NCBI RefSeq assembly: GCF_006345805.1
Contig: NC_043005.1
Span: 73,408,001-73,472,000, forward strand
Length of the DNA: 64,000 nt
Origin: Octopus sinensis
Lineage: Eukaryota
Direction: 5' to 3'
Positions 9,350 to 9,428 of this stretch are shown here, piece after piece. The notes beneath the pieces are model-generated. The model was given only the letters and a program-made list of their open reading frames with translations. It ran no database searches and was not told the origin of the DNA. Within the stretch, counting starts at the first letter, position 1, and each line of letters begins with the position of its first letter. The position numbers and the translations under genes were made by a program.

Positions 9350-9428
9350 GATTGCCTCGATAACTGAAGAGGTGCCGGAGCAGGTTTCCGCCCCGACATC
9401 CGAAACTCGGAGTCTTATTATGGCAATC
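9350..9428 (+). ncRNA. Type I hammerhead ribozyme (canonical core, GUC cleavage triplet)
   Basis: CTGAAGA at 9364-9370. Extended helix II 9371-9401 closed by G-C. GAAA at 9402-9405. Helix III ACT/AGT with CGG loop. C17 at 9414. Helix I GATAA/TTATT, then a 2x2 internal loop, then GATTGCC/GGCAATC. Confidence 0.88.

What the first reader, a model, noticed from the sequence alone, without database searches (positions are those of the whole stretch)
9350..9428. Canonical full-architecture type I hammerhead ribozyme in non-coding DNA
Seen: every conserved core base is present (CUGAAGA 9364-9370, G10.1-C11.1, GAAA 9402-9405, G-U-C 9412-9414). Helix III is A9405-U9413, C9406-G9412, U9407-A9411. Helix I is 5 bp, a 2x2 internal loop (UC/AU) and 7 bp (GAUUGCC/GGCAAUC). 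Helix II is unusually long (31 nt, UUU loop, two bulges, two mismatches). Established: natural type I hammerheads use a helix I bulge for loop-loop contacts, and Penelope-like elements and retrozymes carry hammerheads. Inference: this is a self-cleaving RNA (cut after C9414) in a small, probably non-autonomous mobile element (~9240-9460). The long helix II is atypical of the minimal Penelope hammerheads.
Basis: partly seen in the sequence, partly recalled or inferred. Interest (0 to 1): 0.88.

Follow-up and report, generated by a model that had tools for sequence, protein, structure and literature searches.

The report
Decaying hammerhead ribozyme relic in hairpin
The sequence does carry a complete hammerhead-ribozyme motif, but it looks like the worn, truncated tail of a retrotransposon, locked inside a long hairpin by an inverted copy of its own end, which is an ordinary find in an invertebrate genome.

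Summary
My strict type I descriptor finds this site and no other in 64 kb, against about 0.007-0.02 hits expected by chance. Rfam Hammerhead_1 aligns end to end over 9358-9423, but at 21.3 bits, below the gathering score of 34.

The motif is not "canonical". Helix II has two bulges and two C·A mismatches. Helix III is 3 bp with a triloop. The hammerhead fold is 7 kcal/mol worse than the MFE of the 79-nt RNA alone.

The 3' part of the motif (helix III beyond A15.1, the cleavage site and the 3' strand of helix I) is the right arm of a 41-nt inverted repeat (9309-9349 / 9406-9446; -69.9 versus -37.8 kcal/mol for the hammerhead fold). All four arm differences are transitions, with no strand bias, which fits neutral decay.

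The window holds no tandem repeat, second copy or RT/endonuclease ORF, and no relative could be retrieved.

Best reading (confidence 0.5): two 5'-truncated copies, head to head, of the 3' end of a hammerhead-bearing Penelope-like element or retrozyme. That insertion shape is documented. The motif is genuine by descent (about 0.8) but probably does not cleave here. This is a new member of a known kind, of low interest.

The parts
9350..9428 (+). Complete type I hammerhead motif (helix I open)
   Evidence: Direct reading; only descriptor hit in the window; RF00163 at 21.3 bits over model positions 1-45.
9350..9363 (+). Helix I, 5' strand: 7 bp outer stem, UC of the 2x2 internal loop, 5 bp inner stem
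   Evidence: Pairs with 9415-9428. It lies in the loop of the inverted repeat, so this complementarity is independent of the repeat.
9364..9370 (+). Core C3-A9 (CUGAAGA)
   Evidence: One of 12 plus-strand and 10 minus-strand CTGANGA sites in the window, and the only one with the rest of the motif.
9371..9401 (+). Helix II, 31 nt: 11 bp, UUU loop, bulges U9399 and A9382, mismatches C9375·A9396 and A9379·C9392
   Evidence: Constrained fold -8.6 kcal/mol. Both mismatches become G·U on the minus strand. Two transitions would close them.
9402..9414 (+). G12-A13-A14, A15.1, helix III (3 bp with CGG triloop; CUCGGAG is nearly palindromic), U16.1, C17. The predicted cleavage site is 9414/9415.
9415..9428 (+). 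Helix I, 3' strand
   Evidence: The same bases pair better with 9327-9340 of the left arm.
9309..9349 (-). Left arm of the inverted repeat. Read as an inverted, 5'-truncated second copy of the element's last 41 nt; it starts exactly at position 15.2 of the hammerhead.
   Evidence: 41 nt, 90% complementary to 9406-9446, 56 nt between the arms. The four differences are all transitions. With a 3-nt indel it extends to 9296.
9406..9446 (+). Right arm of the inverted repeat, which is the 3'-terminal 41 nt of the direct copy (9350-9446)
   Evidence: The long hairpin is the MFE, -69.9 kcal/mol, z = -10.5.

Best explanation
The locus is a relic of a hammerhead-bearing retroelement of the Penelope-like (PLE) or PLE-mobilised retrozyme kind. 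Two 5'-truncated copies of the element's 3' end lie head to head. The direct copy of about 97 nt (9350-9446) still contains the whole type I hammerhead. The inverted copy of about 41 nt (9309-9349) abuts the 5' end of the direct copy.

Shown: the motif, the inverted repeat, their exact overlap, and the energetics. Inferred: the origin, by the complex inverted and truncated insertion that PLE reverse transcriptase/endonuclease is known to produce, followed by neutral decay.

Consequence: in any transcript that spans both copies, the inverted copy pairs over 41 bp with helix III and the 3' strand of helix I. The ribozyme cannot then form. Even alone it would be a weak, dimer-dependent cleaver. 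It is a hammerhead by descent, not a working ribozyme at this site.
For: 1. The motif is beyond chance. It is the only descriptor hit, with 0.007-0.02 expected per window. Further factors of 0.015 and 0.013-0.21 apply for outer helix I and helix II. RF00163 matches full length at 21.3 bits, about 4e-4 for that family in 64 kb.
2. Helix I pairing uses 9350-9363, which lies outside the arms, so the inverted repeat does not explain it.
3. The inverted repeat has 41-nt arms whose outer ends would both be the element's 3' terminus, with the junction at 9349/9350. [quoted passage not shown] Their hammerheads lie near the 3' ends and they favour microsatellite targets (PMC8557442).
4. PLE hammerheads have a longer helix II, sometimes bulged, and a small palindromic helix III. 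Most occur as solitary motifs attributed to truncated PLEs (PMC4209133).
5. Decay looks neutral. All four arm differences are transitions: two are wobbles on the plus strand and two on the minus strand. Both helix II mismatches are wobbles on the minus strand. Two transitions would restore a 13-bp helix II.
6. There is no tandem array, no second copy, and no long non-repetitive ORF nearby.
Against: - No relative of this sequence could be retrieved, so neither the parent family nor any covariation was seen.
- No RT or GIY-YIG remnant is in the window near the locus. This was judged by eye from the ORFs of 6000-13500, not by a profile search.
- The Rfam score is below gathering.
- Helix II of 31 nt is longer than the 6-8 bp described for PLE hammerheads. 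The unpaired base between A9 and G10.1, typical of PLE hammerheads, is absent.
- The target-site duplication is inconclusive (p about 0.05).
- A DNA-level palindrome or a MITE would give the same inverted repeat.
Confidence: 0.5

Rival explanations
1. This is a working self-cleaving hammerhead that belongs to a small non-autonomous element, for example a single retrozyme-like unit. The upstream arm would be part of the element's own rod-like RNA structure, or a switch that holds the ribozyme off until the hairpin is opened.
For: The core is intact and all three helices are present. Helix I has an internal loop 5 bp from the core, where type I hammerheads make the loop-loop contact (PMC4209133, PMC7229834). 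Viroid-like and retrozyme RNAs also have stable rods that compete with the hammerhead fold.
Against: - The hammerhead fold is 7 kcal/mol above the MFE even for the 79 nt alone, and 32 kcal/mol above with the arm.
- The arm is transcribed first and pairs over 41 near-perfect bp, unlike the loop-rich rods of circular RNAs.
- There is no tandem repeat and no second hammerhead to release a unit.
- Helix II carries two C·A mismatches that are wobbles only on the other strand, so there is no sign of selection on the plus-strand fold.
- Short helix III motifs cleave poorly as monomers (PMC4209133, PMC7229834).
Confidence: 0.15
2. A chance hammerhead look-alike inside a foldback DNA element (a MITE with 41-bp terminal inverted repeats) or a local palindromic duplication. 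Nothing here ever served as a ribozyme.
For: - The dominant feature is the inverted repeat (z = -10.5).
- Helix II is itself a small palindrome that folds better on the minus strand. The whole segment folds at -84.1 on the minus strand versus -73.0 on the plus strand.
- TA dinucleotides flank the arms.
- The Rfam score is sub-threshold, and about 17 hits of 21 bits or more are expected by chance in a genome of about 2.7 Gb (scaled).
- Relaxed hammerhead searches are known to give false positives (PMC6155905).
Against: - The core is strict, not relaxed.
- The 12-bp helix I uses loop sequence, which a palindrome does not explain.
- The joint chance estimate is about 1e-6 to 6e-5 per window.
- No other copy of the supposed MITE is in 64 kb.
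- The target-site duplication is not significant.
Confidence: 0.15
3. A hairpin RNA gene: a long inverted-repeat precursor of small RNAs (siRNA- or miRNA-like), on either strand. The hammerhead motif would be incidental.
For: The stem is very stable on both strands.
Against: No Rfam family matches on either strand at E <= 10 apart from weak chance hits. A 41-54-bp stem with a 56-nt loop is not the shape of a miRNA precursor. No expression or conservation data exist. This reading does not exclude the relic origin; it would be a by-product of it.
Confidence: 0.05

Closest known systems
Hammerhead motifs of Penelope-like elements (Cervera & De la Pena 2014, PMC4209133), especially the variants with a small palindromic helix III (Drosophila, rotifers, shrimps, mosquitoes)
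   Same: Type I topology with a strict core and a G10.1-C11.1 pair. Helix II is longer than the canonical 4 bp and may be bulged. Helix I is short (5 bp) next to the core. Helix III is tiny and nearly palindromic (CUCGGAG). The motif is solitary and dispersed, with no ORF nearby.
   Different: Helix II here is 31 nt (11 bp plus irregularities) against 6-8 bp. There is no unpaired base between A9 and G10.1. Helix I continues for 7 more bp beyond an internal loop. The parent PLE was not identified.
Canonical metazoan type I hammerheads of non-LTR retrozymes and satellite DNAs (Rfam RF00163; PMC7229834)
   Same: Same core and topology. Helix III is 2 bp beyond A15.1-U16.1 with a small loop. Helix I has an internal loop. 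The surroundings are GC-poor.
   Different: It is not in a 170-400-bp tandem repeat. Helix II is not the 4-bp stem with a loop 2 that docks on loop 1. The Rfam score of 21.3 is below the gathering score of 34.
Complex tandem or inverted insertion structure of PLEs (Evgen'ev & Arkhipova 2005; PMC8557442 Fig. 2)
   Same: Two 5'-truncated copies lie head to head, so both outer ends are the element's 3' end. The hammerhead lies near that 3' end. The flanks are AT- and microsatellite-rich.
   Different: Both copies are extremely short (97 and 41 nt). There is no pLTR-ORF-pLTR body, and no clear tail or target-site duplication.
MITEs / foldback elements
   Same: Length of 138-167 bp, long terminal inverted repeats, and no coding capacity.
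   Different: No second copy in the window, no significant target-site duplication, and a GC-rich structured centre that carries a full ribozyme core.

Membership tests
Hammerhead ribozyme, type I (Rfam RF00163) | Conserved core: C3 U4 G5 A6 N7 G8 A9, G12 A13 A14, A15.1-U16.1, H17 | tested here: met
   All present at 9364-9370, 9402-9405 and 9413-9414.
Hammerhead ribozyme, type I (Rfam RF00163) | Three helices around the core, with helix I open and a G10.1-C11.1 closing pair | tested here: met
   Helix I is 5 + 7 bp. Helix II is 11 bp with 2 bulges and 2 mismatches. Helix III is 3 bp. Helices II and III are weak.
Hammerhead ribozyme, type I (Rfam RF00163) | Score at or above the curated gathering threshold (34 bits) | tested here: not met
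   21.3 bits. No hit at gathering on the whole window.
Hammerhead ribozyme, type I (Rfam RF00163) | Hammerhead fold is the stable or an accessible fold of the RNA | tested here: not met
   -18.8 versus MFE -26.0 kcal/mol for the 79 nt alone; -37.8 versus -69.9 with the upstream arm. Tertiary contacts are not modelled.
Hammerhead ribozyme, type I (Rfam RF00163) | Conservation of the core and covariation of the helices among relatives | not testable with these tools
   No relative was found in the window, metagenome or viral contigs, the protein-route searches, or the paper texts. The source genome is not in the collections.
Hammerhead ribozyme, type I (Rfam RF00163) | Mg2+-dependent self-cleavage 3' of H17 | not testable with these tools
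   Needs in vitro transcription.
Non-LTR retrozyme (metazoan) | Tandem repeats of 170-400 bp, each with a type I hammerhead | tested here: not met
   No tandem repeat of such a period at or near the locus, and a single motif in 64 kb.
Penelope-like element insertion | RT plus GIY-YIG ORF flanked by pLTRs | tested here: not met
   No long non-repetitive ORF within 6000-13500 (by inspection only). A heavily 5'-truncated copy would lack the ORF.
Penelope-like element insertion | Hammerhead near the 3' end, 5' truncation, and an adjacent inverted 5'-truncated copy | tested here: met
   Geometry of 9309-9349 (inverted) against 9350-9446 (direct), with the hammerhead ending 18 nt before the arm end. 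The features are as described in PMC8557442. The shape fits, but descent is not shown.
MITE | Terminal inverted repeats plus a target-site duplication plus many copies | tested here: inconclusive
   The inverted repeat is present. The duplication-like match 9276-9299 / 9456-9480 has p about 0.05. There is no second copy in the window. The genome-wide count cannot be tested.

The most novel reading that the evidence does not exclude
An active type I hammerhead with an unusually long, irregular helix II, whose internal defects replace loop 2 in the tertiary contact. It would be held in check by a built-in upstream anti-ribozyme arm, making a ribozyme/hairpin conformational switch carried by a new, very small (about 140-170 nt) non-autonomous mobile element.
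Probability: 0.06. Interest if true: 0.55.

Novelty: new member of a known kind. Interest (0 to 1): 0.2.

Why it matters
Hammerhead motifs occur in the thousands in many invertebrate genomes and mark past activity of Penelope-like elements and retrozymes. One more decayed copy changes nothing in that picture.

The locus is useful in two ways. First, it is a worked example: a perfect core is not enough to call a ribozyme. The flanking inverted copy, the sub-threshold model score and the neutral pattern of substitutions all point to a fossil. Second, if the parent family is found in the source genome, its 31-nt helix II would add a variant to the known range of PLE hammerheads.

Tried and rejected
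- **Rfam at gathering on the whole window:** nothing. At E <= 10 on 251 nt, only chance hits to SNORA33 and Yfr8; the filters lost the hammerhead. It appeared only when 88 nt were searched.
- **Type III reading,** with the long stem as helix III: rejected by reading the sequence. Position 16.1 would be G9350, and helix I would be only a 3-bp hairpin.
- **Minus-strand hammerhead:** no CUGANGA there.
- **Part of the upstream tRNA-derived SINE:** rejected. Three copies align only up to about 9222, then diverge into different simple repeats.
- **More hammerheads in the window,** including minimal PLE-type motifs without helix III: none.
- **Relatives through spurious ORFs.** The 79-aa minus-strand ORF over the hairpin found none. 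The three plus-strand frames joined into one query found none.
- **Relatives by DNA pattern.** Two patterns each in metagenome and viral contigs found none. Sequence fragments searched in paper texts gave only unrelated primers and siRNAs.
- **Naming the organism.** An exact look-up of a window ORF found no record. The closest RT relatives lie on about 1-kb contigs of GCA_024449705.1 and Logan run SRR7158634, which no held paper names.
- **Six-frame Pfam scan of the neighbourhood:** It was replaced by inspecting the ORFs.
- **Target-site duplication:** not significant.

Full report
**1.

Reading 9340-9440 gives, on the plus strand:

GAUUGCC-UC-GAUAA / CUGAAGA / 31-nt helix II / GAAA / CU-CGG-AG / U-C / UUAUU-AU-GGCAAUC

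All coordinates in the finding are right.
- Core: CUGAAGA at 9364-9370, GAAA at 9402-9405, GUC at 9412-9414.
- G9371 pairs with C9401.
- Helix III is A9405-U9413, C9406-G9412 and U9407-A9411, with a CGG triloop.
- Helix I is 5 bp, a 2x2 internal loop and 7 bp.
- Helix II, folded with its two closing pairs enforced, is 11 bp with a UUU loop, bulges U9399 and A9382, and mismatches C9375·A9396 and A9379·C9392.

**2. The motif is more than chance.**

- I wrote a strict-core type I descriptor (CUGANGA, helix II 8-40 nt with at least 2 closing pairs, GAAA, helix III of at least 3 bp, U-H, helix I of at least 4 bp). It finds this site and nothing else on either strand of the window.
- Three hundred first-order Markov simulations of the window gave 0.02 hits per 64 kb, or 0.007 with helix I of at least 5 bp.
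- Two features lie outside that descriptor. The outer 7-bp stem of helix I has P = 0.015. A helix II at least this stable has P = 0.013 with window composition and 0.21 when the same bases are shuffled.
- Together these give roughly 1e-6 to 6e-5 per window.
- Rfam gave nothing at gathering on the whole window and nothing on a 251-nt stretch. On 9345-9432, Hammerhead_1 (RF00163) aligned from model position 1 to 45 over 9358-9423 at 21.3 bits, E = 0.0024. Rescaled, that is about 4e-4 for this one family in 64 kb.
- It also corresponds to about 17 chance hits in a 2.7-Gb genome, and it is below the gathering score of 34. The model skips helix II as a local end and shifts helix I by 3 nt, so it does not score the two extra features above.

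**3.

- The motif sits inside an inverted repeat. Arms 9309-9349 and 9406-9446 are 41 nt, 90% complementary, and 56 nt apart. With a 3-nt indel the repeat extends to 9296-9349 / 9406-9462.
- The right arm begins exactly at hammerhead position 15.2. It contains helix III, the cleavage site and the whole 3' strand of helix I.
- The MFE of 9300-9450 is the long hairpin: -69.9 kcal/mol, z = -10.5. Forcing the hammerhead in the same RNA gives -37.8 kcal/mol.
- Even the isolated 79 nt prefers another fold (-26.0 versus -18.8 kcal/mol), which pairs GAC/GUC and UCCGA/UCGGA and so buries G12-A13 and C17.
- The upstream arm is transcribed first, so a transcript that spans the locus should form the hairpin, not the ribozyme.

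**4. Nothing else supports an active element.**

- The window holds no second copy at up to 3 mismatches or by sensitive blastn.
- There is no tandem repeat at the locus.
- No other hammerhead-like motif was found, even with a minimal PLE-type descriptor.
- The stretch 6000-13500 holds only short or low-complexity ORFs.
- Upstream lies a tRNA-derived SINE at 8896-9223. Three copies in the window align up to about 9222 and then run into different simple repeats. The hairpin, 85 bp further on, is therefore not part of the SINE.

**5. The substitution pattern looks like neutral decay.**

- The four non-Watson-Crick positions in the arms are 9312/9443, 9316/9439, 9328/9427 and 9342/9413. All are transitions. 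Two are G·U on the plus strand and two are G·U on the minus strand.
- The two C·A mismatches of helix II are G·U on the minus strand. As a result the minus strand folds better (-84.1 versus -73.0 kcal/mol).
- So nothing indicates selection for the plus-strand fold since the repeat formed.
- As a thought experiment, closing the two helix II mismatches by single transitions makes helices I and II part of the MFE. The hammerhead fold then lies within 5 kcal/mol of the MFE. This fits a formerly well-formed ribozyme that has drifted.
- At about 5% change per arm, the chance that about 13 core bases all escaped mutation is roughly one half. The intact core therefore does not argue for present function (inference).

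**6. What is known about such elements.**

- Canonical metazoan type I hammerheads have a helix I of 6 bp and a helix II of 4 bp, with interacting loops. Helix III is 1-2 bp capped by a small palindromic loop, and they cleave efficiently only as dimers in tandem repeats (PMC4209133; PMC7229834).
- PLE hammerheads have a larger helix II (6-8 bp, sometimes bulged), a shorter helix I, and in several taxa a small palindromic helix III. They show low activity in vitro, and most occur as single motifs 'probably related to truncated PLEs' (PMC4209133).
- PLE insertions are highly 5'-truncated. [quoted passage not shown]' Their hammerheads lie near the 3' ends, and they favour microsatellite targets (PMC8557442).
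- A purified PLE protein cleaves and extends both DNA strands (PMC11167929). That gives a mechanism for such head-to-head copies.

**7. Best explanation (confidence 0.5).**

- 9350-9446 is the last about 97 nt of a hammerhead-bearing PLE or retrozyme RNA, inserted 5'-truncated.
- 9309-9349 is a second, inverted and even shorter copy of the same 3' end.
- Both outer ends are the element's 3' terminus, and the junction is at 9349/9350.
- This accounts for four things: the solitary motif, the exact overlap of the repeat with the ribozyme's 3' part, the absence of an ORF or tandem array, and the AT-rich simple-sequence flanks.
- The motif being a hammerhead by descent I put at about 0.8. The specific PLE-type twin-copy origin I put at about 0.5.

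**8. Rivals.**

- A working ribozyme in a small element, with the arm as a rod or a switch: 0.15.
- A chance look-alike in a MITE or palindrome: 0.15.
- A small-RNA hairpin gene, which would not exclude the relic origin: 0.05.

**9. Limits.**

- No relative could be obtained, so the decisive test (core conservation and covariation) was not possible. The attempts were two protein-route searches, two patterns each in metagenome and viral contigs, and a text search.
- The source genome does not seem to be in the collections. The best match to a window RT fragment is 87%.
From memory only, the 154- and 184-bp repeats at 22962-23255 and 39099-39736 resemble abundant octopus SINE-like repeats. Octopus genomes do carry many PLEs (PMC13282606). 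This is a lead, not a result.

**10. Verdict.**

The motif is real and correctly described. It is most likely a fossil of a known kind of retroelement ribozyme, locked in a hairpin and probably inactive. Interest is low.

Noticed in passing
window 8896-9223 (+), 23949-24269 (+), 36281-36550 (-), partial 21200-21335 and 60436-60510: A tRNA-derived SINE family of about 330 bp with simple-repeat tails. The copy at 36.3-36.6 kb has a different tRNA-like 5' head from the other two, so the heads appear to have been swapped on a shared body. ARAGORN and Rfam at gathering call no tRNA there.
   Followed up: partly
window 8808-8864 and at least 12 other sites; tandem arrays 22962-23255 (period 154) and 39099-39736 (period 184): A module of about 57 nt recurs throughout the window, partly inside short tandem arrays of 154-184 bp. 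My scans found no hammerhead core in them. From memory the units resemble abundant octopus SINE-like repeats, which would make the source a cephalopod; this is unverified.
   Followed up: partly
window 9371-9401, minus strand: The complement of helix II is a cleaner hairpin than helix II itself. The two C·A mismatches become G·U, and the whole 167-nt segment folds 11 kcal/mol better on the minus strand.
   Followed up: yes
window 37191-38501 (+) and 42153-42782 (-): Fragments of non-LTR retrotransposon ORFs. One carries a zf-RVT domain (E = 3.5e-5, below Pfam's cut-off). Its closest relatives are 87% (Logan SRR7158634) and 79% (GCA_024449705.1), and then about 60% in echinoderms and cnidarians.
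   Followed up: partly
window 6450-7235, 44670-45879, 28174-30729 and many others: An extreme load of simple repeats: (TA)397, about 300 copies of TATC, and several (ATG)n blocks. These create long spurious ORFs rich in His, Asp or Ile. Two stretches, 28637-29170 and 29645-30394, end in nearly the same peptide, which suggests a local duplication of about 1 kb.
   Followed up: no
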